This document shows, piece by piece, positions 39,503 through 61,667 of a stretch of 64,000 nucleotides of DNA; the first letter of the stretch is position 1; each line of letters begins with the position of its first letter. Location: the IMG/VR virus record IMGVR_UViG_3300032334_002567, positions 1 to 64,000 of that record; one strand, 5' to 3'. A program made the translations under genes and the position numbers. The notes under the pieces are model-generated. The model did not search any database. It worked only from the letters and a program-made list of their open reading frames with translations, and was not told where the DNA came from.

Positions 39503-39509
39503 GAGAAAA

Positions 39510-41824: not shown

Positions 41825-44098
41825 ATGTCAAAGCAACACAAGAAAACGAGAAACTTTCACGCTGGAATGGGTCAAGCTGTAGCGGAGAGAACGATTCTCA
41901 GAAAGAAAGAAGATGGTAAGTGGGAAACATGGGCAGATGTTGCCAATCGTGTTGCACTAGGAAATTCACTTCTATGCAAAGAATCAAAAGAACAAGAGTC
42001 AGAATATGAGGCTTTACAAAAGCATTTAATAAACGCAACAACTCTTATGAGCGGTAGACATCTACAGCACGGAGATGAGTCGCAACCAGAAAGAAACATG
42101 GAAGTTTACACCAACTGTTCAACTTCCAGCACTAGCTTCATGCTTTTTTACTTATTAATGAACGGTTCTGGTGTGGGTAGAAGTTATGACGACGACATGA
42201 TGCTTGTTGATTGGGATAACGCTCCAGCTCTTAGGTGTGTTTTAAGTGAAACTCATGCAAATTTTGATTTTTCGGCTCACGAATCTGTGAGAGATGCAAA
42301 ACACAAATATGGCAGCGGCAAAGACGTTTTATGGCATCTCGTTGAAGATACAAGAGAGGGATGGGCAAAAGCACTAGAAATATGGGAAAATGCAGCTTTT
42401 GAAAAAATCCATAAAGATAAATTGTTCATACTTGACTTTTCAAACGTTCGACCAAAAGGTGCTCCTATAAATGGAATGCAGAAACGTCCAGCTAGCGGAC
42501 CTGTTCCCTTGATGAACGCATTCAACAAAGCTGCAACTCTAAAAGCAACTGGTTTGCCCCGGTGGATGCAGACAATTTATATTGATCATTATTTTGCCGA
42601 ATGTGTTTTGGTCGGTGGGGCCAGAAGAGCAGCAAGAATGTCTACTAAGACATGGAGAGATGATAGTGTGTTAGAATTTATTACTATCAAAAGACCAATT
42701 GAATTTGCCAATAAAGGGGTAGATGAAATAACAGAGCTAAGAAAGCAAATAAGTCCAATGGGATTCTTGTGGTCTTCAAACAATAGCATTACTGTTGACC
42801 AAGAATTCTGGAAGCTCTTGAATGTAAAAAAAGGTAGTGAAGAATATAGTTCTGAATTAGCCAAACATGCAAGGAATGTTTATAAACTTGCAGTTTCTGC
42901 TTCTTATGGTGATGGCACTGGTGAGCCTGGATTTATCAATGTTGACAAACTAAATCAAGATAAGCTCGGAACTGAGAAGCTTGTTAAAGAAAGTGACTCA
43001 CTTGTTGGTAGCAAAAAATATAGCTTAAATGAAGACACAGGACTTTATATTAATAGGCTTTTGAAGAAAGCTGTTAAAAAACAGCATTTCATGATAACCA
43101 ATCCATGTGGTGAAATTTCTATTGCTGTGTGGGGTGCTTTTTGCACTATTGCGGATGTGGTTCCTTATCATGCTGAAACCTTGGAAGAAGCAGAAGACGC
43201 ATTTAGGTGTGTTACAAGAGCTTTAATCAGGGTAAACACCATGGATAGTGTTTATAAAAAAGAAGTTAAAAGAACTAACAGAATAGGAGTTGGAATAACT
43301 GGGATTCATGAATTTGCATGGAAGTTCTTTGGATTAGGATTTAAAGATCTAATAAATGAAGAAAAGTCCAAGGAATTTTGGATGACTATGGCAAGATTTA
43401 AAAGAGCCGTGCAAGACGAAGCCAGAGAATACTCAAAGAAAATTGGCGTAAATGTTCCTCATTCTGACACGACAATTAAGCCTGCTGGCACAACGAGTAA
43501 ATTATTTGGCCTCACAGAGGGATGGCATCTACCGTCTATGAGATGGTACATGAGATGGGTTCAATTCAGTAAATCAGATCCATTGGTCAAAAAGTATAGT
43601 GAATCTGGTTACCCTGTGAAAGAACTGACTAGCTACCAGAATACTGTTATTATCGGATTTCCAACTACCCCAGTTATAACTGAGCTTGGGATGGAAGACG
43701 CCCTGATTACAGCCGGTGAAGCTTCACCAGAAGAGCAGTACAAGTGGTTAATGCTCGGTGAAAAATACTGGATTCGTGGCGTAGATGTTGACGGAAATCC
43801 ACTAGATAAAGATACGGGAAACCAAATTAGCTACACGTTAAAGTACAACCCCAATAAGGTTGATTTTAAGACTTTCTGTGACACGCTAAAAAATAGTCAG
43901 AGCCTAATTAAATGTTGTTCGGTAATGCCACAAGAAGATCGTAGCAGTTATGAATATTTACCAGAGGAATCGGTGACAAAAGCAGAATACGAAAACGTTG
44001 TAAGAAAAATTACTTCTTCTTTGCAGGAAGACGTAGATCGTACACACGTAGATTGTGCAGGCGGTGCATGTCCCGTTGACTTTAAGAAAGAATCATGA
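41825..44098 (+). CDS. nrdJ: Class II (adenosylcobalamin-dependent) ribonucleotide reductase
   Basis: TNCS, GSGVG, GGARRAA, GEPG, TNPCGE, RIGVG, TTIKPAGTTS, C-terminal CAGGACP; no beta-subunit gene in the window. Confidence 0.88.
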   Translation: MSKQHKKTRNFHAGMGQAVAERTILRKKEDGKWETWADVANRVALGNSLLCKESKEQESEYEALQKHLINATTLMSGRHLQHGDESQPERNMEVYTNCSTSSTSFMLFYLLMNGSGVGRSYDDDMMLVDWDNAPALRCVLSETHANFDFSAHESVRDAKHKYGSGKDVLWHLVEDTREGWAKALEIWENAAFEKIHKDKLFILDFSNVRPKGAPINGMQKRPASGPVPLMNAFNKAATLKATGLPRWMQTIYIDHYFAECVLVGGARRAARMSTKTWRDDSVLEFITIKRPIEFANKGVDEITELRKQISPMGFLWSSNNSITVDQEFWKLLNVKKGSEEYSSELAKHARNVYKLAVSASYGDGTGEPGFINVDKLNQDKLGTEKLVKESDSLVGSKKYSLNEDTGLYINRLLKKAVKKQHFMITNPCGEISIAVWGAFCTIADVVPYHAETLEEAEDAFRCVTRALIRVNTMDSVYKKEVKRTNRIGVGITGIHEFAWKFFGLGFKDLINEEKSKEFWMTMARFKRAVQDEAREYSKKIGVNVPHSDTTIKPAGTTSKLFGLTEGWHLPSMRWYMRWVQFSKSDPLVKKYSESGYPVKELTSYQNTVIIGFPTTPVITELGMEDALITAGEASPEEQYKWLMLGEKYWIRGVDVDGNPLDKDTGNQISYTLKYNPNKVDFKTFCDTLKNSQSLIKCCSVMPQEDRSSYEYLPEESVTKAEYENVVRKITSSLQEDVDRTHVDCAGGACPVDFKKES

Positions 44099-44646
44099 AT
44101 TTCAAAGATTTTTTAGTTTGCGAACAACAAGTAAGTTTGAGCCAAAAAATTGGCCCGATCCTAGGGGACGCACAACAGTTGCGTGATCAGGCCAATAAGC
44201 TTGCTGTAAAGCATTTAGCCCAATTTTCTGGGGATGTGGTGAGAAAGATAAGGGATATACTTCATAGCCATTGGTCGGATGAACAAGTTAAATATTTAGA
44301 AAGGCTAAGAATTGTAGCTTTTAATATAGCTGATGCTATAAAAGAAAAAGGAGACCTACCAGGAATCATAGCTGCATCTGTGGAAGAATTAGATAAAATT
44401 GTTAAGGACATTGGTTCTCCAATAAACTCACTTGCAGTTGATCCAGGAACCGATAATAAAGAAACGGATTCAAAGGGCACAAGTCCCGCAATTAAGAACG
44501 TACCAAATAAGGACCAGTCCAAGCCGCCAGCACAAACTAAAACTGTTGATTCGGCCGTAACAGCTACAAATCCACTTAGCAACGATCCTGAGTCGGTTGT
44601 AAGCCCTCCTTTGGGAGGCAGCTCTGGTACTTTAGATGCGTTTTAA
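44095..44646 (+). CDS. Hypothetical protein with capsid-targeting-like N-terminus
   Basis: MNFKDFLVCEQ. Confidence 0.6.
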   Translation: MNFKDFLVCEQQVSLSQKIGPILGDAQQLRDQANKLAVKHLAQFSGDVVRKIRDILHSHWSDEQVKYLERLRIVAFNIADAIKEKGDLPGIIAASVEELDKIVKDIGSPINSLAVDPGTDNKETDSKGTSPAIKNVPNKDQSKPPAQTKTVDSAVTATNPLSNDPESVVSPPLGGSSGTLDAF

Positions 44647-44648
44647 CA

Positions 44649-44677
44649 TTGATTTTCTTAAATAATTTAAATATAAT
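44649..44677 (+). promoter_or_regulatory. Sigma70-like promoter for guaC and the GATase
   Basis: TTGATT-17 nt-TATAAT. Confidence 0.6.
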
Positions 44678-44713
44678 CCTAAGCACCTTCCCCAATTAAT
44701 TAGGATAGAAAAA

Positions 44714-45757
44714 ATGAAAGTTGAAAGCGAAATAAAGCTAGATTTCAACGATGTGTTAATAAAGCCAAAAAGAAGTAGTCTCGAAAGCAGATCTCAAGTA
44801 GACCTGAATAGAGAATACAAATTTAGAAATTCTTCCATAAAAATTGAGGTTGGTGTGCCTCTCGTAGCAGCCAACATGGATACAATTGCTACGTTTGAAA
44901 TGGCCCGAGCTTTGTCAAAAAGAAACATATGGACAGCCTTACATAAATTTTACTCTATCAATGAGATTGAAAAATTTTTTAAAGAAGAAGCAGACGTAGC
45001 TTCTAAGTGCTTTTATTCTCTAGGAATAAATGAAGATGATTTTGATAAGATAAAAAAACTTCAAGGATTAGGTGTAAAGCTTCCGTTCATTTGTGTTGAC
45101 GTTGCAAACGGCTATAGCCAAAAGTTCGTAAATGAATGTGGTTATTTAAGAAAGCTATTCCCAAATGCAGTAATATTGGCTGGGAACGTATGTACACCAG
45201 AAATGGTACAAGAGCTACTGATTTCGGGCGGAGTGGACATAATTAAAGTAGGGATAGGTGGTGGAAGTGGATGTATCACTAGGCATACAACGGGCATAGG
45301 ATTTCCACAACTTAGTGCCGTAATAGAATGCGGCGATGCTGCTCATGGTCTAGGCGGGCATATCTGCTCTGATGGTGGTTGTAGGGCTCCTGGCGACATA
45401 GCCAAAGCATTTGCTGCTGGTGCTGACTTTGTGATGATGGGAGGCATGTTAGCGGGGCATGATGAATGTGGAGGTGAATTTAAACTAAATGAAAATGGCG
45501 AAAGAAAATCCATGTGTTTTTATGGAATGAGCTCTGAGCTTGCTATGAAAAAATACTATGGAGGCAAAGCTAGCTATAGAGCAAGTGAAGGAAGAGTAAT
45601 AGAAGTCCCCTATAAAGGCCATGTAGATCAGACTATAGAACAAATATTGGGTGGGTTAAGAAGCACTTGCACTTATGTTGGTACAGATAAATTAAAAGAC
45701 TTATCAAAGTGCACTACATTTATAAGAGTGAATAGAGTACACGATAATATGAATTAA
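44714..45757 (+). CDS. guaC: GMP reductase
   Basis: KLDFNDVLIKPKRS, AANMD, DVANGY, KVGIGGGSGCITR, SDGG, FYGMSS, YRASEG, GGLRSTCTYVG. Confidence 0.93.
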   Translation: MKVESEIKLDFNDVLIKPKRSSLESRSQVDLNREYKFRNSSIKIEVGVPLVAANMDTIATFEMARALSKRNIWTALHKFYSINEIEKFFKEEADVASKCFYSLGINEDDFDKIKKLQGLGVKLPFICVDVANGYSQKFVNECGYLRKLFPNAVILAGNVCTPEMVQELLISGGVDIIKVGIGGGSGCITRHTTGIGFPQLSAVIECGDAAHGLGGHICSDGGCRAPGDIAKAFAAGADFVMMGGMLAGHDECGGEFKLNENGERKSMCFYGMSSELAMKKYYGGKASYRASEGRVIEVPYKGHVDQTIEQILGGLRSTCTYVGTDKLKDLSKCTTFIRVNRVHDNMN

Positions 45758-45768
45758 GAGGTGAAAAT

Positions 45769-46911
45769 ATTTGTGGAATAGCAGGTTTTATAGGTTTATC
45801 TAAAAAACCTATCTTTAGTTACCAGCTTACAACTAAACTATTTGAAATAAGTGAATCCAGAGGAATTGATGCCGCAGGATTTTGGGCCGTGCGTCCTGAT
45901 GGTGGCGTTATATACCATAAAAAACCCATTAGATCATCTAGGTTTGTAAAGAGAGATGAATGGAGGGATGTTTTTAAATATAATCCTAATTTATTATTAG
46001 CACACGCAAGAGGAGCTTCTAAAGGTGTAGGAGAGCCTATGTTTAATAAAAACAATCATCCTTTCACAAGCTTAGACAAGTCTATTGGTCTTATCCACAA
46101 TGGCAGGGTAGAAGACTCTGAGTATCGGTCTTTAAAAAAAGCATATGAAGTATCAAGTGATTGCGATTCTGAAGTTATCCTTAGAATAATAGAAGCTGGC
46201 TCGCACTATCATCCGCATGAGATTACAGAGTTTATAAATCTGGATTATCCAAATAGATTAGCAGGGATTAGGGACGTTTATTCCTTTATAAACTCTGGTC
46301 ATTTAGCTGTGGCTGTGGGTGAGAGGAATGACGAAAACAATAGATCCCTGTGGCTTTTTAGAAACGCTTATAGACCTCTTTGGATTGTGGATATGCGTGA
46401 GCTACTAGGACAAATATTCTTTGTCTCAGAGCCGGGAATATGGGAGGAGTCAATAAATGAATGTCCTTCTATTAGAGGACATTCTAAATTTCAAAAATTA
46501 ATAGAGTTGCCACCGGAAGAAGTTTGGTTGATAGAATCAACAAAAGAAGAACCAACTCCAAATAAAATAAAAAAATACAAAGTTTCTAAAAGCAAAGAAA
46601 TAAGTGCTAATGAAATAAACAAATATTTTCCATTGATAGAAAAGCAGCCGTCGTTTGAAGTAATAAGCACAATAAGCGAAGAAAAAGAAACCCACCAATT
46701 TTTCGAAAATAATGATTGGGAAGAATTAGAATTAAAAGAGCTTGAAAGTAAATGCAACAAAGTTTCAGAAACTGTTCAAGAAATTAAAAATTGGGTAAAA
46801 GAAAAAACTACAAAACAGTCTATAGGCAAGGACGAAATAGATAGAATCTCTAATTTAATGAATAATCAAATCGATGATATGAACAAAATAGTTTCAATAC
46901 TGGAGAATTAG
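45769..46911 (+). CDS. Class II (Ntn) glutamine amidotransferase, ATT start
   Basis: (M)CGIAGFIG, SRGIDAAG, LAHARGAS, NNHPF, HNG, CDSE; GAGGTG SD 5 nt before ATT. Confidence 0.88.
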   Translation: MCGIAGFIGLSKKPIFSYQLTTKLFEISESRGIDAAGFWAVRPDGGVIYHKKPIRSSRFVKRDEWRDVFKYNPNLLLAHARGASKGVGEPMFNKNNHPFTSLDKSIGLIHNGRVEDSEYRSLKKAYEVSSDCDSEVILRIIEAGSHYHPHEITEFINLDYPNRLAGIRDVYSFINSGHLAVAVGERNDENNRSLWLFRNAYRPLWIVDMRELLGQIFFVSEPGIWEESINECPSIRGHSKFQKLIELPPEEVWLIESTKEEPTPNKIKKYKVSKSKEISANEINKYFPLIEKQPSFEVISTISEEKETHQFFENNDWEELELKELESKCNKVSETVQEIKNWVKEKTTKQSIGKDEIDRISNLMNNQIDDMNKIVSILEN

Positions 46912-46942
46912 TAACTATATAAGATATAGAAATGAGGTTTCT

Positions 46943-47482
46943 ATGTCTTATAATTTTGAAGATTTTGAAGATTTTGTTACAGACGAAGATTTCTTAAATA
47001 AGAAGAAAAAGAAAAAAGTTAATGGAAAGAAAAAAGGCAATAGGACTGAGCTTGAACTAACTAAAATACTCAATAAGAGATTCGGAACAGGATTCAGCAG
47101 ATCAGTTGGCTCCGGAAATCGTTGGTCACAAACTAACCACTTGCCAAAACACGCCCAAGAAATATTTTCTGGGGACCTGATTGTTCCTTTGGGGTTTAAG
47201 TTTGTATTAGAAAGCAAGGGCGGCTACGAAGACATAGACATAAATGGTCTATTTGTACGAGGCAACAAAGAACTTGATGGATTCTTGGACCAAGTTTCAA
47301 GAGATGCCAAAAGATGTGACAAAAAACCAATGCTATGCTGGAAGAAAAACAGAAAACCGTGGTTGGTTGCTATTTTGACTAAAGACATGACACGGGAGTT
47401 CAAATATGAACTTCGCTACGGAAAATGGTCTATTCTAGCACTTGAAGAACTTCTAGGTTTAGAGGACGAGTTTTTCATCTAA
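46943..47482 (+). CDS. Holliday junction resolvase (Hjc-like PD-(D/E)XK)
   Basis: KKKGNRTE, RSVGSG, GDL, VLESK, Q..RDA, PML.WK. Confidence 0.8.
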   Translation: MSYNFEDFEDFVTDEDFLNKKKKKKVNGKKKGNRTELELTKILNKRFGTGFSRSVGSGNRWSQTNHLPKHAQEIFSGDLIVPLGFKFVLESKGGYEDIDINGLFVRGNKELDGFLDQVSRDAKRCDKKPMLCWKKNRKPWLVAILTKDMTREFKYELRYGKWSILALEELLGLEDEFFI

Positions 47483-47883
47483 ATGTCCCTAGAAGAAGGT
47501 CTGATTTCTCTTACCTTCTTGCCTTCAAGATAGTTGCGTAACGCATAAACAACACTAGGATATAGATTTGAAGGGTTTTTATCAGCCCTTTTAAGAAAAC
47601 GCCATAGTAGGAACACAGGGTCATTAGGCCCGCTAAAATTCTTATTGCAAAAGTCATCACAGAACTTGATGACCTTTTCTCGGTCATGTTTAGCAAGAGC
47701 TTTCGCAATAACAGCGATCATGGAAGTTGGTCTTTGAGGCATAAGTCTCATTGCTTCGATAATTTCTTCTTCATACATGATCTTAAAATCGAGCCTTTGA
47801 TTTGAAGTAGCCCGTAGTTTTTTTGCACTACCGGACTTCATCATTTGATTTGTAACGCTTTCTACAATTTTTTCTTTGTTCAT
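47479..47883 (-). CDS. Stand-alone paralogue of the C-terminal domain of the ParB-like protein at 50890-51918
   Basis: Shared AV..K...FCD...F...DP..L...Y...A....KK/RK...DI/DV pattern. Confidence 0.6.
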   Translation of the reverse strand: MNKEKIVESVTNQMMKSGSAKKLRATSNQRLDFKIMYEEEIIEAMRLMPQRPTSMIAVIAKALAKHDREKVIKFCDDFCNKNFSGPNDPVFLLWRFLKRADKNPSNLYPSVVYALRNYLEGKKVREIRPSSRDI

Positions 47884-47894
47884 ACCAAGCCTTT

Positions 47895-49118
47895 CTATTC
47901 AAAATCCGACAAGTTGAAGAAATTGCATTCTTCTGAAATAAACTTTTTAGTCGAGAAATCAGTTAGAAACCAGTACCAATTCTTGGGTTTCTCTGGCTCA
48001 ACTGCTTCTCCATAGCCATCCGTTATGACGAAAACGCCGTCTGGGTACTTTTCACCATTTTGGATATGCTGCTGGATTGTTTGCTCCAATACAGCTAAAG
48101 AAGTGCCTCCACCACCATAAACAGAGACTTTCCCATTCTGCTTTGGACTAACTTCTGCCACCTTAGTATCGAAGCAAAATAGACGAACGTCAAATTTTTC
48201 GGAAGGCAATGAAGAAACTGCGGAGAAAAACCTATCTTTGTATCCCCAGCAAGACCCAGAGGTGTCAAGAAAGAAGTAAATTTTAATTTTAGATTTGCTC
48301 TTTTCAAGATGTTCAACTTCCATTTCTGACGGGATAAAGATTTCATCTAAGGCGGTAAGTCCTGATAAACGTCGATTAATTCTAGCCCATTGATCTATTT
48401 CTTTAAATTTACTTTGGTATTTGGCGTGGCACCATTTCTTGATTACAGTTTCCCATTTTCTTTTTTTTGTTTTAACTTCAAAATTTAAAACCTGCCAGAT
48501 TCCTTCCCCTAGCCCAATATGTTTTTGTATAGCATCAGAGAGACTCTTTTTTTCTTCTTTTGACATGCCTTCCAAAATATTGTTAGGAAGGTCGTTTTTA
48601 AAGGCGTGTTCGTCTACAGTGGATATTTCACCTTCACCTGGACCACCATCTCCGAATGACTTTTCAAACAAACTGTAGTAAAACTCATATGTTTCAGAAT
48701 TGGAAAGGTTAACTTTTTCTGCGAAAACGGTGTCCACCCAACAATAACTTTCCCAATTAAGTATGCTTTCTCTCTTAAAACCAAATTTTTCCACTAAAAG
48801 ATGGTTGACAACCACATCTAGGCATTGGTTACAGGCCAACATATTCACAGAGTCTTTAGTTCTTTTGCCGTGATTCAAAATCAAGTGCAAAGATTCATGG
48901 CAAATTACAAAGAGTTTATTGTAATAATCTAAAGAGTTCCAGAAATCCTCATTAAAAAGAAAGACAACAAACTCTCCTTCTTTGTCAAATTGAACGGCGG
49001 CCGTGTTGACTCTATTGGTAAAATGAGGTTTACCAATTTGCCATATTTTATAAAATATGGCATGGTGTTCTTCTAAACTCCTACTAATCTCTATCCACTC
49101 TTTATTTGTAATGCTCAT
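47895..49118 (-). CDS. Metallopeptidase (HExxH) plus VWA domain protein (DUF2201-like)
   Basis: TAAV, CHESLH, D..VN, VDEH; LDTSGS (MIDAS), FDT, GGGT, VITDG. Confidence 0.88.
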   Translation of the reverse strand: MSITNKEWIEISRSLEEHHAIFYKIWQIGKPHFTNRVNTAAVQFDKEGEFVVFLFNEDFWNSLDYYNKLFVICHESLHLILNHGKRTKDSVNMLACNQCLDVVVNHLLVEKFGFKRESILNWESYCWVDTVFAEKVNLSNSETYEFYYSLFEKSFGDGGPGEGEISTVDEHAFKNDLPNNILEGMSKEEKKSLSDAIQKHIGLGEGIWQVLNFEVKTKKRKWETVIKKWCHAKYQSKFKEIDQWARINRRLSGLTALDEIFIPSEMEVEHLEKSKSKIKIYFFLDTSGSCWGYKDRFFSAVSSLPSEKFDVRLFCFDTKVAEVSPKQNGKVSVYGGGGTSLAVLEQTIQQHIQNGEKYPDGVFVITDGYGEAVEPEKPKNWYWFLTDFSTKKFISEECNFFNLSDFE

Positions 49119-49128
49119 TTTAGTTGCT

Positions 49129-50820
49129 CTAGGCGTAGAAGTTCTCTATAGCATAATTAAAGTGCTCCTGAGTTCTCACTACCTTATGAATATTTCCAGA
49201 TAATCTTATTGCAGAAAAAAGAGTAGTGAAGATTCTTGAATTATCAACCAAAAAACTACTAAAGTCTTTTGGAGTAGGAACTAACTTGGCAACCCAATCG
49301 GCGTTAGACAGCCAACTTTTCTCTTTGCTGGAGAATTTTCTATTCTGTACGCCAGATACAATACAATGGTTAACTATCGAAATAAAGTTTGCCCAAGGGT
49401 CTCTAGGATCTAATAAACCCTGTGAAACTTCTGTGGGCGAAAGCTCCATATTACATAATATTTCCAAGCAATTCATTGCTTCTTCACCCGTCATTAATTT
49501 GGGAATAGATTTCACTATATTCTGAAACTCTCCCAACCGTAACTTTGAAAGATCGGCATTTTTTTGTATTTTTTCTAAAGTGGTTCCCCACATTACACTC
49601 ATAGCCTTCTTGTTATAAAAAGGCTGTGCTAGATTTATCAGGTCTCCTTCATTATCTTCAAACTTAATAGCCTGCAACTCTGTGAAATACTTTCTAATTT
49701 TCTTTACCACGCTACTGTTGGTGTTGGCCTTTAGTATCTCTTCACAAACTTCTTTAAATACAGAAACCTTGTCGATTTTTCCAATAATGTACGTAGAAGT
49801 CTTGCTGTTTTCAGAAATTAAAGAAGATATTTTTTCTTTTGGAACAAGTGGCAAAAAGTAATCTTTTAATGCGTCTGACTTAAGAACGTACTTCATGGCA
49901 GATGCATAGTTGTTCTCATTTGAAAGAAAAACTTTTGCTTGATCTGTATCTTTGGCAGACATCAAAGATTCAAGCTTTTCTAAAATAGGACCGCTACTTA
50001 GAGAAGAATAAAGCTTTGAAATATTACTAGATGAAGGGAGTATGTCTCTCATATCCCCCTTACAGCAATATGTATCCAGAGCATATTGCAGCCTTCTGGG
50101 TGATACCTTGCCTTTTTCTTCTGTTGAAAGGTCTTCCCACCATTGAATAGCCGAGTCGGCTGTTCTCTGTCCGTATCTAGTGCGAAACCAGTCAACACTA
50201 GGCGAGTAGGGAACTTCCACAGATACATGGAAACGATCTTTTTGTGCTGGGTCTAGCCTTTCAACGTCATAAGTTTGATCTTCATCATCTGGATTGATTG
50301 CAGCCCAGATCATTTTTAATTTAGGAAATTTGTATCCGTTAATGGATTTAAATTGCAGCAGCTCCATTACCGCATTTCTAACTTTTTTAGGGCTGCGGTT
50401 AAACTCATCAAAAAATAACGCCTCTATTTCCCCTGTGGCGAAAACAAGAGGACGGATCAAGTCCAAATATGCCAAGCCCTGTTCTCTGCCTATCGCATGA
50501 TCTACGATCTTTGATGCAGATGATTCTGACATTTTCCAATTAGAAACAACCCAATCAACAGCAAGTTGCCGGTCGATTGTTGAAAGCTCTTTCAAAATTA
50601 AGAATTGTTCTGGGACTTTATTCTCTATTTTCTCTTTTGGAACACCAACAAAGTCAACCCAAGGGTCCATTGTAGAGGCACTAAAATACCTGTAATTTAT
50701 TGAGCGACGTTCAAAAGCATCTTTTACCATGGCTGTTTTACCAACGCCATGCCTGCCGATGAACAAAACATTCTGGCTATTTTCAATCCAGAATTCAATT
50801 TTTTTGTCGATTTGATTCAT
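49129..50820 (-). CDS. MoxR-type AAA+ ATPase with long C-terminal extension
   Basis: GRHGVGKT, DFVGVP, FFDEFNR, AAINP, LDPAQKDRF, SPRR. Confidence 0.88.
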   Translation of the reverse strand: MNQIDKKIEFWIENSQNVLFIGRHGVGKTAMVKDAFERRSINYRYFSASTMDPWVDFVGVPKEKIENKVPEQFLILKELSTIDRQLAVDWVVSNWKMSESSASKIVDHAIGREQGLAYLDLIRPLVFATGEIEALFFDEFNRSPKKVRNAVMELLQFKSINGYKFPKLKMIWAAINPDDEDQTYDVERLDPAQKDRFHVSVEVPYSPSVDWFRTRYGQRTADSAIQWWEDLSTEEKGKVSPRRLQYALDTYCCKGDMRDILPSSSNISKLYSSLSSGPILEKLESLMSAKDTDQAKVFLSNENNYASAMKYVLKSDALKDYFLPLVPKEKISSLISENSKTSTYIIGKIDKVSVFKEVCEEILKANTNSSVVKKIRKYFTELQAIKFEDNEGDLINLAQPFYNKKAMSVMWGTTLEKIQKNADLSKLRLGEFQNIVKSIPKLMTGEEAMNCLEILCNMELSPTEVSQGLLDPRDPWANFISIVNHCIVSGVQNRKFSSKEKSWLSNADWVAKLVPTPKDFSSFLVDNSRIFTTLFSAIRLSGNIHKVVRTQEHFNYAIENFYA

Positions 50821-50823
50821 AAT

Positions 50824-50867
50824 AAAAAAGTAGCTCCGTTGAGAAGGCAAACCTCTCAACGGAGCTA
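50824..50867 (-). terminator. 14-bp perfect hairpin plus U-tract (terminator/attenuator)
   Basis: TAGCTCCGTTGAGA-9 nt-TCTCAACGGAGCTA-CTTTTTT. Confidence 0.8.
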
Positions 50868-50889
50868 AGTTGGAATTTAGCCTAAGAGG

Positions 50890-51918
50890 TCAAGCGTCTT
50901 TTCTATACCACCAAGAGTTCTTGGGTGCAAGCCATTCGCCATCTTCGTGACGCCATTCAAAAACATCGCTCTGAACTTCACGCAAAACCTTGATCTTGCG
51001 ATTGTTGACCAAGCTATTCATGGCAGAAAGGGCCAATCGGTACTTCTTTAAGTCTTCACATCTGGTGAGTCTGTCCAATGCCAGATACAAAGCCTTAGCT
51101 GGATCTCCCTCGTCTACGAATCGCACATTCTTAATGCGATCACAGAAATCAGAAAGCAAAGCCGGTCCATAGAAGATATACATTTTTCCTACAGCCGCCT
51201 GCACTTCTGCTTGGGCCTTGGGAATGTGAGTCATCACCCAATCGATCACTTCTGACCACTGGATTGCAAACTCTGTGATTTCTGATGGTGTGTAGGAGAG
51301 CTTGGCATCAAGTCCACGCATAATCGCCTTGCAGAAACCAGCGGTTTTATTGCCCCAACGACGATCAACGACCATCTGCATCTTCTCACCAACACTTCTT
51401 TTCGATCCTGAGTCGATGGCAAACTTGCTCTCTGGAAGCACTCCAAAAGTGAAGTAAAAACAAACCTCTTGCTTTTTGCTTGCCAAGAAGGCGTTGATTC
51501 GATGTTGGCCATCACCAGCTTGTCCGTTGGTATCAATCGCAATGCTTTCATGAGTAGGAAGCCAGCGATCAGACTCAATGTCTCTTTGCAAAGCTTCAAC
51601 GTGCATTCTTTTAACACGCCGATTACCCTCGCTAATCGACCAAATTGCTCCAAGCAATTCTTCTGCCATTGGTCGAGTCAACATAATGAATTCACTGTAT
51701 TGGGTGCTCTTCTTCACGCATGTGAACCAAGGCTTTCCGCTACGGTGAGCTTCGCTGAGATAGTGGTTTCGGTTTTCAATCGCTTCTGCTTCGATGAGCT
51801 TGATTTGCTCTTCGCTGCTGCTTGAGACGATTGATTCTTTTGGAGTGACACCAGGAATGCTGGGCTTCAACTTCGAACCAGCAATGATTAAATCAGCGAC
51901 CGAGCCTACCTTACCCAT
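50890..51918 (-). CDS. ParB/Srx-like (DGQHR) domain protein
   Basis: TRPMAEELL...NRR...DIESDRW...IAID..G...DGQHRINA...IDSG..RS; AAGGAG SD. Confidence 0.8.
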   Translation of the reverse strand: MGKVGSVADLIIAGSKLKPSIPGVTPKESIVSSSSEEQIKLIEAEAIENRNHYLSEAHRSGKPWFTCVKKSTQYSEFIMLTRPMAEELLGAIWSISEGNRRVKRMHVEALQRDIESDRWLPTHESIAIDTNGQAGDGQHRINAFLASKKQEVCFYFTFGVLPESKFAIDSGSKRSVGEKMQMVVDRRWGNKTAGFCKAIMRGLDAKLSYTPSEITEFAIQWSEVIDWVMTHIPKAQAEVQAAVGKMYIFYGPALLSDFCDRIKNVRFVDEGDPAKALYLALDRLTRCEDLKKYRLALSAMNSLVNNRKIKVLREVQSDVFEWRHEDGEWLAPKNSWWYRKDA

Positions 51919-51965
51919 GGATTAGCTCCTTTGTTAGGGTTGTTTTGGTTATTGATCTGTCAGCT

Positions 51966-51993
51966 ATGTTAGCACGACTTATTCGGTTGTAAA
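51966..51993 (-). promoter_or_regulatory. Early sigma70-like promoter
   Basis: TTTACA-16 nt (ending TGC)-TAACAT. Confidence 0.6.
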
Positions 51994-52090
51994 GGGGGCC
52001 ACAATCAACTTCTTCTATTTCAAAATTAGCACAAAAGACACTAAATAAAGTGGCGAGTTAAGGATAACTTTTGCTTTTACAAGGAGGTAA

Positions 52091-52759
52091 ATGATTTGGC
52101 ACTCCCCCAAAATTTTAATTTGTTTGCCTACATTTCACTCAGAAATAGCATGGCTTGAACGATCTACAGAATCAGTTTCAAAGCAAACTTACGCAAACTT
52201 TGATTGCTATCTAGTCAAAGATTCTTGTACCAAGGCAGGCACTCCATGCCTTGAGTGCGACAACTGCAGGGCGACTGTGTCTTTTTGCCAGAAGCTTGCA
52301 CAAAAGGATAAAAGATTCAAGTTTTTTAATTTGCCTCTTAATTGTGCAGGTGCAGGTTGGGGGCCGAGAAATTTTGCTATACAAAATACTAAGCATGATT
52401 TAATAGCCTACCTAGATGATGATAATTGGTATGAGCCAAATCATCTAGAACTGTTGCTAGAAGCTTTAAAATCTAAAGATTCAGATATGGCATACACAGG
52501 CACTAGGTTAATTAAAAAAGATGGAACAATAGAAGGCATAAGAATTCATCCGTATGAGCCAAAGCAAGGGTACATAGATACATCTGAAATACTACACAAG
52601 AGGTTTTTAATAGAAAAATATGGAGGGTGGAGATGGGTAAAAAAAGGAAATGATTGGGATATAGTCTCTAGGTGGGTTCCGGGGTTAAAATGGAGCCACA
52701 CAAATCAAATCACCTTAAATTTTTACCTTCGTGAAGGATGTGGAATACACAGAACTTAA
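52091..52759 (+). CDS. Glycosyltransferase family 2
   Basis: LPTF, SVSKQTY, PRNFAI, IAYLDDDN, IDTS, NDW; AAGGAGG SD; CTAAATA upstream. Confidence 0.88.
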   Translation: MIWHSPKILICLPTFHSEIAWLERSTESVSKQTYANFDCYLVKDSCTKAGTPCLECDNCRATVSFCQKLAQKDKRFKFFNLPLNCAGAGWGPRNFAIQNTKHDLIAYLDDDNWYEPNHLELLLEALKSKDSDMAYTGTRLIKKDGTIEGIRIHPYEPKQGYIDTSEILHKRFLIEKYGGWRWVKKGNDWDIVSRWVPGLKWSHTNQITLNFYLREGCGIHRT

Positions 52760-53166
52760 AAGAACTTCCAGAATTTTGATTTTTCTTTTGGTTTTTGCTC
52801 TGGCTCTTCTTTTATTTTTTGAGCTAACATTTTTTGCTTTTCTTTTTTTCTTGCATTGTGTATGGCTCTTTTCACAAGTAGTTTGGCTGCGATTGGAATA
52901 AAAGGTAGATTCCTTTTATCCGACTCTTCTTTGAGCCAATCAACCACTCTATCAATGTTTTGTTCTGTCCATTCGCTTCCATTTTGATCCATTATTGCAG
53001 CTCTTTCGTTACATTTACAACTTGGAGTAGGAACTATGCCTACTTTTGCTAAAAGAGCTTTTAGTTCAGTGCCGGGACCTTCAGGGTTTTCTAGATAATT
53101 TTGTAGATTTTCTATGTATCTGGTTCTTAGATTTTGTACGTCTTCTATGTTGAAAGATTTACGCAT
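52756..53166 (-). CDS. Conserved-looking phage protein with a CxC motif
   Basis: GPGTELKALL..VGI...CKCNERA..MD..G..W...N...VDWLKEE...R.LPF. Confidence 0.65.
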   Translation of the reverse strand: MRKSFNIEDVQNLRTRYIENLQNYLENPEGPGTELKALLAKVGIVPTPSCKCNERAAIMDQNGSEWTEQNIDRVVDWLKEESDKRNLPFIPIAAKLLVKRAIHNARKKEKQKMLAQKIKEEPEQKPKEKSKFWKFF

Positions 53167-53739
53167 TTAATTTGCCTCTTTACGTAATCTAAAATTATTT
53201 CTACTAATCATAGCACGAGTTTGATGTGCAAAAGAAACTATATCTGCCCTGTGTTCGGTGATTGTTTCTTTAGCAGGCAAACCAGAATCTAATTTATCCA
53301 AGCAAACTACTAAAGGTATTCTAGCAACCGGACCAAAGTGAAAACATCCATCTTTTAGTATCGCTCCACATTGCTTTGCTGCTTCCCAAGCATCTTCTTT
53401 GCTAACATTTGGAAACTCAACAAAGCTATTCTCTAAATTTTCTATTGTTATTCTTTCTGGTTCTTGACTTGGAGGCTCAAACAAAGAGTCAAGCGGAGTA
53501 GTATAGGTGCAACAATCCTCAGCATTAATATCACAACAATCAAAACACTCTGTGTAGCATCGTCTATCACAAAAACAGCCGTCGTCTTGTGGTGATCCAG
53601 TTGGAACACAAAGAGGTCCTGGACCACCGAGGGCACAAGTCCAGTTAGGATTTTGATCGTCTGGTGGGTAACAGCAACCTTCTGCTTTTGCCAACATTAC
53701 AAATAAAATATCGTCTTCTTCTTGTTTTTCTTGGCTCAT
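53167..53739 (-). CDS. Cys-rich protein with somatomedin-B-like spacing in the N-terminal half
   Basis: GCC...C...C...CFCDRRC...CFDCC....DCC. Confidence 0.6.
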   Translation of the reverse strand: MSQEKQEEDDILFVMLAKAEGCCYPPDDQNPNWTCALGGPGPLCVPTGSPQDDGCFCDRRCYTECFDCCDINAEDCCTYTTPLDSLFEPPSQEPERITIENLENSFVEFPNVSKEDAWEAAKQCGAILKDGCFHFGPVARIPLVVCLDKLDSGLPAKETITEHRADIVSFAHQTRAMISRNNFRLRKEAN

Positions 53740-54950
53740 TCTTCCACCTTAAAAGTAAAATCAATGTCTAAAAACTTATCACTTATTCTTTTTTTGTCTT
53801 CTTCGCTTATTTCTTTGCTAGAAATGATTAAAATACTTTCTACTTGACATCTAACTTGTTTTATACCTATTATATTTAAACTTAGTAATTCTTGTTTAAT
53901 TTTATTTATAGATTCACCTTTAATTGTAAAAGGTCTACTATCTAAAAATTCAAATTGACGATAAAGCCTTCCGCAATCACAACGAGAATATTCTTGCTCT
54001 ATTTTACAATAATCTCCATTCCAATATCTTATAAAAGGACTTGGTAACGAAAAATAATCAGTGCTAAGTAATTTTTTGTCTTTTTCTTCGCACCAACTTA
54101 AATTATCTAATAGATGTTGTCTTCTTTCTTTACAAGTGATAAATGTAGATCCGCCATCCCAGCAACGCATATGGTCACAAAATTTATCTATAAAACCAGA
54201 TTCCAATAAAAAGCTTACATCTTTTTTGAGTATTTTTTCATTTGTATTGCTTAAAAGTGTACAAATTTTACCCTTAAAATTAAACTTTTTAATATAGTGA
54301 CACAAAGAGTTTATAGTAGAACCGGGACCTAACAAAACATCTATTTTATTTTCAGATAAAAATTTCAGCAAATCACGATAAAAAACATCTGGTTGATATT
54401 TGAGTAATTCTAAACTAGCACAATGCGATGTGGATTGATACTTTTCGCCATGCTTCTCCATAAAATTAGGGGGGTTTTTAAAAGTCTCCACGGCATTGTT
54501 AGACACTACCCTATTCTTAAAAAGATAAAGAACATGTGGATTAAAAATATTAAATTCGTCTAAAATCAAATCATAATGATTTTCACATTCTATGAATTTT
54601 AAGAATGGATCCCACCTAAGATACTCAAATCCAACGCCGGTTGTGCTTCCACTACTACGCATTATTTGAGATTCAGATGATAACTCACTAACATACCAAT
54701 CCTTTTTATTCAACAAATCGTCTTTTGAAAAATAAAATTGATTTTTATCTCTATAAACCTTGCTGTTTTTAAAAGCCCAAAGCTCAATATTTTTCTTTAA
54801 AACATTAACAACATCTAAAAGAACTTCTTGATCTTCATAAAGCAAGCCAGAACAAAAACTTTTGTAATCGTACAATACTTGTTTATTAGGTAAGTTATTT
54901 TTCCATTTAACTAGAAATTCTTTAGTTTTTTTATAACCTAGTTTTAGCAT
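53736..54950 (-). CDS. PaaK/CapK-like adenylate-forming (ANL) ligase
   Basis: RSSGSTTG P-loop, CWDGG, LLSTD, PFIRYWNGD, CDCGR. Confidence 0.8.
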   Translation of the reverse strand: MLKLGYKKTKEFLVKWKNNLPNKQVLYDYKSFCSGLLYEDQEVLLDVVNVLKKNIELWAFKNSKVYRDKNQFYFSKDDLLNKKDWYVSELSSESQIMRSSGSTTGVGFEYLRWDPFLKFIECENHYDLILDEFNIFNPHVLYLFKNRVVSNNAVETFKNPPNFMEKHGEKYQSTSHCASLELLKYQPDVFYRDLLKFLSENKIDVLLGPGSTINSLCHYIKKFNFKGKICTLLSNTNEKILKKDVSFLLESGFIDKFCDHMRCWDGGSTFITCKERRQHLLDNLSWCEEKDKKLLSTDYFSLPSPFIRYWNGDYCKIEQEYSRCDCGRLYRQFEFLDSRPFTIKGESINKIKQELLSLNIIGIKQVRCQVESILIISSKEISEEDKKRISDKFLDIDFTFKVEE

Positions 54951-54952
54951 AG

Positions 54953-55513
54953 CTATAACATAAAATCTGGTGTTTTTGGAGTAATGTATTTTAGGAACTC
55001 CACAGTTCCATTATTTGTAAAAACTACCTCATATCGACCTCTACATTGATGAGTGCTGCATTCGCAGTCCAAAGATCTAAAGTACTCTGCAATTGTTTCG
55101 CTTCCAGTTTTCCCAAATTTTTGTGTTCTAAGATAACATTTTCTTTTGCTTCTTCTGCCTGAGTCTAAAAACCAAACCATCCAAGACTCATCTGTCAAAA
55201 CCTCTAAAGTTTCCCGAGCTATTATCTTCGATGAGTCTTTATAAAAAATGTTATGTATGTCATTAAAGATAGGATATGCTACACTATAAACTCTATAAGT
55301 ATTTTTATCTTTTTTTATAGTATTCTTATCTATCTTAAAAAAATTACTTAACATATCAACTTTATAAGACAGCCAGTCTTTATTTTTATCTCGCATGGCC
55401 AAGTAGCAGTTCTTACCTTTGGATGGTCTTATAATAGAAGAACCTCCCAAGATAGTACCATAAAGCACTTGCTTTTGTTTTTCTGTAAATTTTGGACCAA
55501 TTTGGTAAGTCAT
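54953..55513 (-). CDS. Free-standing double-motif LAGLIDADG protein with catalytic acidic residues altered
   Basis: VLYGTILGGS and WMVWFLDSG in place of GxLLGDG and WFMDDG. Confidence 0.75.
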   Translation of the reverse strand: MTYQIGPKFTEKQKQVLYGTILGGSSIIRPSKGKNCYLAMRDKNKDWLSYKVDMLSNFFKIDKNTIKKDKNTYRVYSVAYPIFNDIHNIFYKDSSKIIARETLEVLTDESWMVWFLDSGRRSKRKCYLRTQKFGKTGSETIAEYFRSLDCECSTHQCRGRYEVVFTNNGTVEFLKYITPKTPDFML

Positions 55514-55516
55514 AAA

Positions 55517-56056: not shown

Positions 56057-56063
56057 TTAATTC

Positions 56064-56579: not shown

Positions 56580-56633
56580 ACTATATTTATTATCATAATG
56601 TTCAAAACTTAACTATAATAAATCGGAGGAATA

Positions 56634-56930: not shown

Positions 56931-56931
56931 T

Positions 56932-59568: not shown

Positions 59569-59648
59569 ACTTTCTCCTAAATTATTCAAAATATCTCTCT
59601 TTTATATAGAGAAGACCTGTATTTTTTACCAATAACCAAGGAAATAAC

Positions 59649-61234: not shown

Positions 61235-61291
61235 CTTGATTTTTTTTCCAATACATGTAAGATAAGTTATTTAGTGGGCTCAAATTGCAAA

Positions 61292-61666: not shown

Positions 61667-61667
61667 T

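What the first reader, a model, noticed from the sequence alone, without database searches (positions are those of the whole stretch)
47479..51993. Early operon: ParB-like, MoxR AAA, peptidase-VWA, then a truncated ParB paralogue
Seen: four co-directional genes behind a TTTACA/extended -10 promoter. The first and last share a C-terminal domain (FCD..F...DP..L pattern), and the last lacks the DGQHR domain. Known: MoxR-VWA pairs act as chaperone/remodelling machines. Inference: the bracketing paralogues could be substrate/adaptor and a dominant-negative modulator of a host-takeover or counter-defence module.
Basis: partly seen in the sequence, partly recalled or inferred. Interest (0 to 1): 0.6.

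Follow-up and report, generated by a model that had tools for sequence, protein, structure and literature searches.

The report
Huge-phage ParB-like pair bracketing MoxR–vWA
A clade of very large environmental phages keeps a four-gene block in which a ParB/sulfiredoxin-fold protein and a stand-alone copy of its C-terminal domain flank a known AAA+ ATPase and protease-vWA pair; the sequence observations hold, but the proposed host-takeover or counter-defence role has no support so far.

Summary
The window is the start of a 381-kb phage record. The four minus-strand genes are real.

- **g1** (342 aa) has a ParB/Srx-fold core with a DGQHR motif and a helical C-domain.
- **g4** (134 aa) is a stand-alone copy of that C-domain (hhalign 99.7%, E 4.7e-27).
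- **g2** is a MoxR-clade AAA+ ATPase.
- **g3** is an HExxH zincin (DUF2201_N) fused to a vWA domain with a complete MIDAS motif.

The g2–g3 pair is the N4 gp24/gp25 and phiRSL1 ORF091/092 type. It has already been described in jumbo phages.

The TTTACA/extended -10 promoter belongs to a recurrent promoter class that is also conserved in relatives. However, a strong terminator hairpin separates g1 from g2 here and in 13 of 14 relatives. The block is therefore not a simple operon.

The g1…g4 bracket is conserved across about 20 related huge-phage loci. At least three lineages lack AAA–vWA but keep g1 and g4, and AAA–vWA occurs elsewhere without them. These look like two separable modules. A g1–g4 complex got only weak support.

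"Early" expression and any host-takeover or counter-defence role remain untested. This is a new variant of known kinds, of moderate interest.

The parts
51966..51993 (-). Sigma-70-like promoter: -35 TTTACA, 16-nt spacer containing an extended -10 TG, -10 TAACAT
   Evidence: Found. It belongs to a class with 18 matches in the genome, 10 of them in sense upstream regions against 0.7 expected. The same type sits upstream of g1 in relatives L005, L009, L013, L018, L025, L026, L028 and L031. Function has not been measured.
51926..51931 (-). Shine-Dalgarno AAGGAG, 7 nt before the g1 ATG
   Evidence: Read directly from the sequence.
50890..51918 (-). g1: 342-aa protein with a ParB/Srx-fold core, a DGQHR motif and a helical C-terminal domain (phrog_5931)
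51394..51711 (-). g1 residues ~70-175: ParB/Srx-fold core. The DGQHR motif (residues 136-140) lies at 51499-51513.
   Evidence: The AF2 model has pLDDT 84.7. The top 23 VIA rows are all ParB, Noc, KorB, PadC or Srx, with Z 3.5-5.6 and about 90 residues aligned. G137, H139 and R140 are invariant in 27 homologues.
50959..51363 (-). g1 residues ~186-320: helical C-terminal domain shared with g4
   Evidence: hhalign gives 99.7%, E 4.7e-27. There is no clear solved-structure match; the best is the BrxU helical region at Z 4.3.
50821..50867 (-). Intrinsic-terminator-like element between g1 and g2: a 16-bp perfect stem (50867-50831) followed by CTTTTTTATT, which abuts the g2 ATG
   Evidence: Found. 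Folding gives -31.5 kcal/mol, z -6.9, with 0 of 200 shuffles as stable. Unrelated sequences form equivalent hairpins at the same place in 13 of 14 relatives (z -3.7 to -9.2).
49129..50820 (-). g2: MoxR-clade AAA+ ATPase of 563 aa from the ATG at 50820 (the ORF is open back to a TTG at 50859). Walker A GRHGVGKT is at 50734-50757; Walker B DE is at 50404-50409. A long helical C-terminal region is of unknown function.
47895..49118 (-). g3: HExxH zincin (DUF2201_N; the HESLH motif is at 48885-48899) fused to a vWA domain with a MIDAS DTSGS motif (48252-48266). phrog_1314, mis-named 'HNH endonuclease'.
47479..47883 (-). g4: 134-aa stand-alone paralogue of the g1 C-terminal domain. Its start is 11 nt after the g3 stop. 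Its stop overlaps the convergent PDDEXK gene by 4 nt.

Best explanation
This is a conserved block of one clade of huge environmental phages. It is built from two separable modules.

Module 1 is g1 plus g4.
- g1 is a nucleotide-binding ParB/Srx-fold protein of the DGQHR (DndB/DUF262-like) kind. It has a phage-specific helical C-terminal domain in the position where ParB and KorB carry their DNA-binding domain.
- g4 is that C-terminal domain alone.
- Inferred: g1 acts on DNA as an NTP-gated binder. g4 tunes it by pairing with g1's C-domain or by competing for that domain's ligand.

Module 2 is g2 plus g3.
- It is a MoxR-clade AAA+ ATPase with a zincin-vWA partner, the N4 gp24/gp25 type.
- Inferred from the family: the vWA MIDAS site captures a peptide of a client protein, the ATPase remodels that client, and the HExxH domain cleaves it.

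Transcription.
- g1 is read from a sigma-70-like extended -10 promoter and ends at a strong hairpin terminator.
- In this genome g2-g3-g4 are packed 10-11 nt apart with no promoter of their own. They must therefore be made by read-through at a lower level than g1.
- Most relatives carry a second promoter of the same type after the terminator.

Whether module 2 acts on module 1 is open. The linkage looks ancestral in the clade but is dispensable.
For: Shown:
- Paralogy of g1 and g4.
- ParB/Srx fold, with invariant G-x-H-R.
- Invariant Walker A/B and Arg residues in the AAA+ protein. 12 of 14 family members hit AAA_3, and the best PDB hit is 2r44.
- Invariant HExxH and a complete MIDAS motif, a vWA fold at Foldseek prob 1.00, and DUF2201_N in 12 of 12 members.
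- Exactly two copies per genome, one long and one short, in the window's own genome and in 5 of 5 relatives tested.
- The g1..g4 order in LR756511.1 and in about 20 distinct IMG/VR loci.
- AAA-vWA lies between g1 and g4 in 16 of 21 distinct loci, on both sides of the midpoint root of the g1 tree. At least 3 independent absences keep g1 and g4.
- AAA-vWA occurs alone in phiRSL1 and in N4-like phages (PMC2784036).
- Promoter class and terminator.
- Surrounding genes are class II RNR, GMP-reductase-like, GATase and PDDEXK, and several of these are syntenic in relatives.

Weak: g1-g4 complex ipSAE 0.43 against a best control of 0.01.

From the literature: MoxR-vWA pairs act as chaperone and cochaperone, and the MIDAS site binds an extended peptide (PMC7159879). 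A MoxR plus metallopeptidase-vWA pair has been noted in jumbo phages (PMC7824862).
Against: - No biochemical or expression data exist; there are no RNA runs.
- g1 is not recognised by the ParB_N, DndB or GmrSD_N HMMs, and the structural Z-scores are modest (at most 5.6).
- The C-domain has no recognisable DNA-binding fold.
- All the loci come from related huge phages whose neighbouring genes are also collinear. Part of the linkage may therefore be inherited gene order rather than functional coupling.
- The genomes that lack AAA-vWA are incomplete (7-67%), so the pair could sit elsewhere in them.
- The complex prediction is in the score range where passes are more often wrong than right.
Confidence: 0.45

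Rival explanations
1. All four genes form one machine for host takeover or counter-defence. The MoxR-vWA-peptidase remodels or cleaves the ParB-like protein (or uses it as an adaptor), and the truncated paralogue acts as a dominant-negative modulator.
For: - g4 starts 11 nt after g3, so the two are co-expressed here.
- The four-gene order looks ancestral in the clade.
- Two g3 homologues weakly match Peptidase_M78, the IrrE/ImmA type, at E 0.0017. From my own knowledge, that family cleaves DNA-binding regulators.
- There is weak g1-g4 complex support.
Against: - g1 and g4 stay together without AAA-vWA in at least 3 lineages, with other cargo or nothing between them.
- AAA-vWA works without them in phiRSL1 and in Schitoviridae.
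- A terminator, and in relatives a separate promoter, splits g1 from g2.
- No match to any PADLOC defence model.
- Nothing points to a host target.
Confidence: 0.15
2. g2-g3 is a virion-assembly chaperone and protease, as proposed for jumbo phages by Iyer et al. 2021. g1 and g4 are unrelated neighbours kept only by inherited gene order.
For: - PMC7824862 proposes this role for the MoxR plus metallopeptidase-vWA pair of group 2.2 jumbo phages. It cites the MoxR-vWA pair of Acidianus two-tailed virus, which is needed for tail development.
- The wider synteny of the region shows that gene order is broadly inherited in this clade.
Against: - Here the pair lies among nucleotide-metabolism and nuclease genes, not structural genes.
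- In N4-like phages it lies beside RNA polymerase II and DNA-metabolism genes (PMC2784036).
- The promoters are sigma-70-like, not a late type.
- g4 is translationally close-packed with g3.
Confidence: 0.15
3. g1 and g4 are decoys or inhibitors aimed at host DUF262/DndB-type systems (GmrSD/BrxU/SspE type IV restriction, or Dnd). They would mimic the ParB/Srx-plus-helical module but carry no nuclease.
For: - The DGQHR and GQHRLTA-like motif resembles the DGQQRLTT motif of GmrS/DUF262 (PMC4619093).
- The helical domain's best structural match is the BrxU helical region, Z 4.3 over 124 residues.
- No nuclease domain is present.
- The phage carries glycosyltransferases and other genes that might modify its DNA. 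The link to DNA modification is untested.
- A small-phage homologue sits as an oppositely oriented single-gene insertion, moron-like, among the structural genes of Vibrio phage 1.131.O.
Against: - No HMM match to PF03235 or PF14072.
- Z-scores are low and lie in the range of chance helical matches.
- There is no evidence that the phage DNA is modified or that its host carries such systems. The host is unknown.
Confidence: 0.07
4. g1 is a true ParB of a partition or DNA-segregation system for the very large phage genome, and g4 is an accessory.
For: - The structural matches with the highest Z are CTP-bound ParB, Noc and KorB.
- Longer homologues carry a Lys/Arg-rich N-terminal tail. From my own knowledge, this is reminiscent of the ParA-stimulating peptide of ParB proteins.
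Against: - The ParB_N HMM does not detect g1.
- The motif is of the DGQHR type rather than the GERRxR box of ParB CTPases.
- The window's own g1 lacks the basic tail.
- No ParA gene is adjacent.
- No parS-like repeats were looked for.
Confidence: 0.05

Closest known systems
N4 gp24 (AAA ATPase) / gp25 (vWFA) pair of Schitoviridae, phiRSL1 ORF091/ORF092, and the 'MoxR AAA+ with metallopeptidase-vWA' pair noted in group 2.2 jumbo phages (Iyer et al. 2021, PMC7824862)
   Same: - Adjacent AAA+ gene followed by an HExxH(DUF2201_N)-vWA gene in the same order.
- g3 hits phrog_1314 at 7.8e-34 and g2 hits phrog_1297 at 8.3e-19.
- tblastn finds the g3 family in N4-like Vibrio, Pseudomonas and Achromobacter phages.
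- The profiles hit phiRSL1 ORF091 at 7e-89 and ORF092 at 3e-28.
   Different: - Here the pair is bracketed by a ParB/Srx-fold gene and its C-domain-only paralogue. None is adjacent in phiRSL1 or ZC03.
- g2 has a long extra helical C-terminal region.
- In this sub-clade g2 has a 58-aa insertion between Walker A and Walker B.
- The function of the pair is unknown in every one of these phages.
Cellular MoxR-vWA chaperone systems (RavA-ViaA, midasin, CbbQ/NorQ, vWA-MoxR ternary conflict systems; PMC7159879)
   Same: An AAA+ ATPase of the MoxR clade encoded next to a vWA protein with an intact MIDAS motif.
   Different: - Pfam scores stay below the curated cut-offs (AAA_3 22.9 bits against 27).
- The vWA protein carries an N-terminal zincin.
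- No VMAP or other third component of the ternary systems is present.
- No PADLOC model matches.
ParB/Srx superfamily, DGQHR branch (DndB PF14072/TIGR03187; DUF262/GmrS; PMC4619093, PMC4507180)
   Same: - Fold of residues 70-175.
- A DGQHR pentapeptide followed by an RxTA-like stretch.
- A helical domain follows the core, as in DUF262/BrxU.
   Different: - None of the ParB_N, DndB or GmrSD_N HMMs detects it.
- No nuclease domain is fused, and there are no dnd or dpd partners. No TGT/DpdA is found in the 381-kb record.
- It belongs to a phage-only family (phrog_5931) that Pfam does not cover. Shorter relatives of 270-290 aa occur in Vibrio, Microcystis, Brevundimonas and mycobacteriophages.
Full-length protein plus domain-only paralogue pairs (a general regulatory theme)
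   Same: A short paralogue keeps only the non-catalytic domain and is always encoded in the same genome, downstream on the same strand.
   Different: No interaction or antagonism has been shown. The complex prediction gave weak support only.

Membership tests
ParB/Srx superfamily (fold level) | Alpha/beta ParB/sulfiredoxin core fold | tested here: met
   The AF2 model has pLDDT 84.7. All of the top Foldseek hits are ParB, Noc, Srx, KorB or PadC, but at E >= 0.037. By VIA-align the top 23 rows are all from this superfamily, with Z 3.5-5.6, about 90 residues aligned and rmsd 3.1-4.5 over model residues 70-175. The Z-scores are modest, so the call rests on the consistency of the hits.
ParB/Srx superfamily (fold level) | Phosphate-binding G-x-x-R type motif (DGQHR / GxHR) | tested here: met
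   DGQHR lies at residues 136-140. G137, H139 and R140 are invariant in 27 homologues, while D136 and Q138 vary (N, R).
ParB_N (Pfam PF02195) | Match to the family HMM | tested here: not met
   No hit at E <= 1 in hmmscan. The six-frame search of the genome at E <= 10 finds only another ORF at 184.6 kb, not g1.
DndB / DGQHR domain (PF14072, TIGR03187) | Match to the family HMM | tested here: not met
   No Pfam or NCBIfam hit. One small-phage relative (Vibrio phage 1.131.O gp04) gives DndB at E 0.0043, below the cut-off.
DUF262 / GmrSD_N (PF03235) | HMM match and a fused or adjacent DUF1524 HNH-type nuclease | tested here: not met
   No PF03235 match in the genome at E <= 1. No nuclease domain in g1 or g4.
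ParB-type NTPase/CTPase | Binds and hydrolyses CTP or another NTP; binds DNA | not testable with these tools
   Requires purified protein.
MoxR clade of AAA+ ATPases | Walker A, Walker B and conserved Arg residues | tested here: met
   G22, G25, G27, K28, D138, E139, R196, R242 and R243 are invariant in 14 homologues.
MoxR clade of AAA+ ATPases | Match to the MoxR-type models (AAA_3 / AAA_5) | tested here: inconclusive
   AAA_3 scores E 8.6e-5 at 22.9 bits, below the 27-bit cut-off. AAA_5 scores 19.4 bits against a cut-off of 22. 12 of 14 family members match AAA_3 at E <= 0.01. The best PDB sequence hit is 2r44 at E 1.2e-5; from my own knowledge that entry is a MoxR-family ATPase.
MoxR clade of AAA+ ATPases | Helix-2 insert | not tested
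   A 58-aa insertion between Walker A and Walker B, relative to the LR756511.1 homologue, lies roughly where the helix-2 insert is expected. g2 was not modelled.
MoxR clade of AAA+ ATPases | Adjacent vWA partner gene | tested here: met
   g3 starts 10 nt after the g2 stop. Its vWA fold is confirmed.
DUF2201_N zincin-vWA proteins (COG3864-like; N4 gp25 type; phrog_1314) | HExxH metallopeptidase motif and DUF2201_N HMM match | tested here: met
   H74, E75, H78 and H83 are invariant. The window protein scores 22.6 bits against a 23.2-bit cut-off, but 12 of 12 family members match, the best at E 1.7e-11. phrog_1314 matches at E 7.8e-34.
DUF2201_N zincin-vWA proteins (COG3864-like; N4 gp25 type; phrog_1314) | vWA fold with a MIDAS motif (DxSxS...T...D) | tested here: met
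   D285, S287, S289, T339 and D367 are invariant. Foldseek matches integrin I domains and the MDN1 MIDAS domain at prob 1.00, E 2.7e-4 (model pLDDT 69).
DUF2201_N zincin-vWA proteins (COG3864-like; N4 gp25 type; phrog_1314) | Protease activity and an identified substrate | not testable with these tools
Known anti-phage defence systems (PADLOC-DB) | Match of any of the four proteins to a defence-system model | tested here: not met
   No hit at E <= 1 for any of the four proteins.
Intrinsic terminator | GC-rich hairpin followed by a U-run | tested here: met
   A 16-bp stem with 8 GC pairs, then CTTTTTTATT. z -6.9. The feature is conserved as a structure in 13 of 14 relatives. Termination efficiency cannot be tested here.

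The most novel reading that the evidence does not exclude
The ParB/Srx-fold protein and its domain-only paralogue would be a new two-component, NTP-gated DNA-handling system specific to huge phages. For example, it might organise or mark the very large genome, or act as a decoy against DUF262/DndB-type host immunity. The MoxR-vWA-zincin machine would load, unload or cleave it. This would give the long-orphan N4 gp24/gp25-type pair its first client.
Probability: 0.12. Interest if true: 0.7.

Novelty: new variant of a known kind. Interest (0 to 1): 0.42.

Why it matters
The AAA+/zincin-vWA pair is conserved in Schitoviridae (N4 gp24/gp25), in phiRSL1-like phages and in other jumbo phages, yet it has no known client or role. 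In this huge-phage clade it is repeatedly flanked by a ParB/Srx-fold protein and a stand-alone copy of that protein's C-terminal domain. That gives a concrete, testable candidate for a client or partner.

The analysis also defines a phage-only branch of the ParB/Srx superfamily that Pfam does not cover. It maps a sigma-70-like promoter class and a conserved terminator in an uncultured huge phage.

If the two modules prove independent, the result is ordinary annotation of a conserved syntenic block.

Tried and rejected
- **HMM searches on g1 and g4.** Pfam, NCBIfam and PADLOC scans gave nothing usable. A profile of 27 g1 homologues found no sequence match in the PDB, and the g3 profile likewise found none.
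- **Fold of the C-domain.** No convincing match. The best was the BrxU helical region at Z 4.3, alongside lysozyme-like helical bundles at Z about 3. The ESM Atlas look-up of g4 gave only scores of 0.88 or less and TM below 0.5, and I rejected these as chance.
- **DpdB-like role in 7-deazaguanine DNA modification.** No TGT/DpdA is present in the 381-kb record, so this is unsupported. The record is only 79% complete.
- **CobS/CobT reading of g2/g3.** There is only a faint phrog_249 hit at E 0.0089, and g3 carries a zincin rather than a CobT N-terminus. Rejected.
- **PHROG label 'HNH endonuclease' for g3.** Rejected, because the protein is HExxH plus vWA.
- **g1-g4 complex prediction.** ipSAE 0.43 against a best control of 0.01. 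All three runs agreed in their contacts, and the partner's pLDDT was at least 81. On the tool's calibration the pass mark was reached by 58 of 80 solved complexes and by 2 of 110 mismatched pairs. Scores of 0.60 or under came from only 7 of those 80 solved complexes, and from both mismatches that passed. The verdict is 'weak support' and I do not count it as evidence of binding.
- **Expression.** No RNA run holds the region. Read laying was not used, because only DNA contigs were on offer.
- **AAA-vWA elsewhere in the genomes that lack it at this place.** None was found, but those records are only 7-67% complete.
- **Other searches.** The large representative-protein search and the third word search were not run, because no claim here rests on an absence of relatives.

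Full report
**Context.** The window is bases 1-64000 of a 381,443-bp IMG/VR virus record, which CheckV estimates as 79% complete. GC content is about 35% and the window has no tRNA genes. The nearest GenBank record is LR756511.1, an uncultured 595-kb phage. The genes around the finding are:
- a B12-type class II ribonucleotide reductase;
- an IMPDH/GMP-reductase-family enzyme;
- a glutamine amidotransferase;
- a phage PDDEXK nuclease;
- GT2 glycosyltransferases;
- a LAGLIDADG endonuclease;
- a class-III aminotransferase;
- a glutamate dehydrogenase.

This is therefore a nucleotide-metabolism and accessory region of a huge phage.

**The observation.** Four minus-strand genes are present:

| Gene | Coordinates | Length |
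|---|---|---|
| g1 | 50890-51918 | 342 aa |
| g2 | 49129-50820 | 563 aa from the ATG; the ORF extends to a TTG at 50859, but homologues align from the ATG |
| g3 | 47895-49118 | 407 aa |
| g4 | 47479-47883 | 134 aa |

The similarity of the g1 C-terminus to g4 is real:
- BLASTP gives E 1e-6 over g1 202-319 and g4 18-134.
- Both proteins hit phrog_5931.
- An HMM built from short paralogues of related phages scores g1 at 5.7e-23.
- hhalign of the two family alignments gives 99.7% probability, E 4.7e-27, over 147 columns.

g4 matches g1 residues about 186-320 and lacks the DGQHR-bearing N-terminal part. In the window's sub-clade the short protein also lacks the terminal DIFEW segment, which other short paralogues keep.

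**What the proteins are.**

*g1.* It belongs to a family of about 55 metagenomic proteins with no Pfam domain, found on contigs up to 623 kb.
- The AlphaFold2 model has pLDDT 84.7. It shows an N-terminal helix, an alpha/beta core at residues 70-175 and a helical domain at 176-320.
- Every top structural match of the core is a ParB/Srx protein: CTP-bound ParB, Noc, KorB, PadC or sulfiredoxin. The Z-scores are 3.5-5.6 over about 90 residues.
- G137, H139 and R140 of the DGQHR motif are invariant. DGQHR is the signature of DndB-type domains and resembles DGQQR of GmrS/DUF262 (PMC4619093, PMC4507180).
- The ParB_N, DndB and GmrSD_N HMMs do not detect g1.

I therefore file g1 under the ParB/Srx superfamily at fold and motif level only. 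Shorter relatives of 270-290 aa with the same two domains occur in Vibrio, Microcystis, Brevundimonas and mycobacteriophages.

*g2.* It has invariant Walker A/B and Arg residues. AAA_3 (MoxR) is the commonest Pfam match in the family, in 12 of 14 members, although below the curated cut-off. The best PDB sequence hit is 2r44.

*g3.* It has an invariant HExxH motif and a complete MIDAS motif. DUF2201_N matches in 12 of 12 members, the best at 1.7e-11. The vWA fold is confirmed by Foldseek at prob 1.00. The PHROG label 'HNH endonuclease' for this family is a misnomer.

*The g2-g3 pair.* It is the N4 gp24/gp25 type (PMC2784036) and also occurs as phiRSL1 ORF091/092. Iyer et al. 2021 described a MoxR plus metallopeptidase-vWA pair in jumbo phages and proposed a role in virion assembly (PMC7824862).

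**Transcription signals.**

Two comparisons support it.
- Across the whole genome the pattern TT[GT]ACA-N13-15-TGNTANNNT occurs 18 times. Ten of these lie in sense orientation within 150 nt upstream of a gene, against 0.7 expected, and they often share GTGCTA.
- The same promoter type sits upstream of g1 in many relatives.

*Terminator.* A 16-bp perfect hairpin plus T-run lies between g1 and g2 at 50867-50821 (z -6.9). In 13 of 14 relatives an unrelated sequence forms an equally strong hairpin at the same place (z -3.7 to -9.2). In most of them a second TTTACA/TGnTAnnnT promoter follows it, before g2. The window and its closest relative L005 have no room for such a promoter.

*Inference.* Here g2, g3 and g4 are spaced 10-11 nt apart. 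I infer that they depend on read-through and are made at a lower level than g1. 'Early' expression is plausible for sigma-70-like promoters but is not shown, since no RNA run holds the region.

*A second motif class.* The motif TAAA..AATTGTACCCTA is concentrated at 260-340 kb of the genome and is absent from the window.

**Conservation and linkage.**
- The order g1-g2-g3-g4 is found in LR756511.1, at 28-41% identity, and in IMG/VR loci L005, L022-24 and L027-28.
- In a second sub-clade (L006-L020) g4 lies 3.5-6 kb further downstream. Unknown genes X and Y, and in some loci an M23 peptidase, lie between g3 and g4.
- Every genome tested has exactly one long and one short copy.
- In L026/L034 and L030/L035 g1 is followed directly by g4. 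In L025 genes Y and X lie between them, and in L031 an unknown 533-aa gene does. None of these has AAA-vWA there, and none was found elsewhere in those incomplete records.
- On a g1 tree, AAA-vWA is present in 16 of 21 distinct loci on both sides of the midpoint root. Its absence needs at least 3 changes. This fits an ancestral four-gene block with repeated loss, though the root is not established.
- Downstream neighbours (PDDEXK, GATase, a 183-aa ORF) are also syntenic in 6-14 loci. Part of the linkage is therefore inherited collinearity.

**Interpretation.** I read the block as two separable modules.

*Module 1 (g1 plus g4).* g1 is a nucleotide-binding ParB/Srx-type protein whose helical domain occupies the place of the ParB/KorB DNA-binding domain (row 8qa9). 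g4 is a domain-only paralogue, always co-inherited. The most economical mechanism is that g4 pairs with, or competes with, the C-domain of g1 and so tunes it. This is inference. The complex prediction gave weak support only: ipSAE 0.43 against a best control of 0.01, in a score range where passes are more often wrong than right.

*Module 2 (g2 plus g3).* This is an ATP-driven remodelling and proteolysis pair whose client is unknown in any phage. Its recurrent position between g1 and g4, and the tight g3-g4 spacing here, make g1 or g4 a candidate client. Two facts argue against obligate coupling: g1/g4 persist without AAA-vWA, and AAA-vWA occurs without g1/g4.

Nothing supports a host-takeover or counter-defence role. 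There are no PADLOC matches and no identified host target.

**Novelty.** Each part belongs to a known kind. What is new is the conserved bracket of a ParB/Srx-fold gene and its C-domain-only paralogue around the MoxR-vWA-zincin pair in a clade of huge phages, together with the definition of this phage-only ParB/Srx branch. I rate it a new variant of a known kind, with moderate interest.

Noticed in passing
G000 (whole 381-kb record), mainly 260-340 kb; none in window 1-64000 except an off-consensus copy at 52574: The motif TAAA..AATTGTACCCTA......TGT occurs about 80-96 times. 76 of the 80 exact TTGTACCCT copies lie in one 80-kb region, and 32 lie in upstream regions. It looks like a phage-specific promoter class that marks a distinct, possibly early, gene block.
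   Followed up: partly
window 19342 (upstream of the minus-strand gene 18122-19342), plus G000 105565, 169210, 171662, 194712, 198923, 211843, 292357 and 347350: These are the other members of the sigma-70-like extended -10 promoter class (TTTACAA...GTGCTAnAcT) that drives g1. The genes they control were not annotated.
   Followed up: partly
window 41825-47482: A nucleotide-metabolism cluster that converges on g4: class II (B12-type) RNR, a 183-aa unknown ORF, an IMPDH/GMP-reductase-family gene, a class-II glutamine amidotransferase and a phage PDDEXK nuclease. The PDDEXK, GATase and 183-aa genes are syntenic in 6-14 related loci.
   Followed up: partly
window 52091-63843: An unusual metabolic load for a phage: two GT2 glycosyltransferases, a class-III aminotransferase (56872-58206), a Glu/Leu/Phe/Val dehydrogenase (59649-60908), an RNase T-like exonuclease and a LAGLIDADG homing endonuclease (54953-55513). 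A role in DNA or surface modification is possible but was not examined.
   Followed up: no
window 37725-41543: A metallophosphoesterase followed by an SMC/AAA_23-type ATPase, which looks like an SbcCD or gp46/gp47-like nuclease pair.
   Followed up: no
window 50410-50590 (g2 residues ~65-123 from the ATG): g2 carries a 58-aa insertion between Walker A and Walker B relative to the LR756511.1 homologue. The insertion is shared with the L005-L021 sub-clade and may be an enlarged helix-2 insert.
   Followed up: no
L007 11370-14555; L025 8147-10392; L031 8047-9648; L012 8085-8906: The cargo between g1 and g4 varies among relatives. It includes two unknown protein families (X, about 380-470 aa; Y, about 380-390 aa), an M23 peptidase, a 533-aa unknown protein, and a BaxI-like membrane protein inserted between g1 and g2. 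X and Y have no homologue in the window's genome.
   Followed up: partly
L037 4483-7545: In this 146-kb contig the AAA and vWA genes match as several short ORFs each. This could reflect frameshifts, decay or assembly errors.
   Followed up: no
G000:C1:184638-184763 (524-aa open frame): This is the only place in the genome that the ParB_N HMM detects (E 8.4e-5, below the cut-off). It is a second, different ParB-like gene outside the window.
   Followed up: no
homologues of g1 (alignment A1, columns 48-100): Most longer g1 homologues start with a Lys/Arg-rich tail (for example MSKKSRQRKW, MASKRGLRRRNER), followed by a conserved SVADLI motif and a Pro-rich linker. The window's g1 keeps SVADLI but lacks the basic tail.
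   Followed up: no
sequencing-run search on window 47300-52100: Only metagenome DNA runs from two studies hold the region, and one of them is labelled lake water. The habitat is probably freshwater, and the host is unknown.
   Followed up: no
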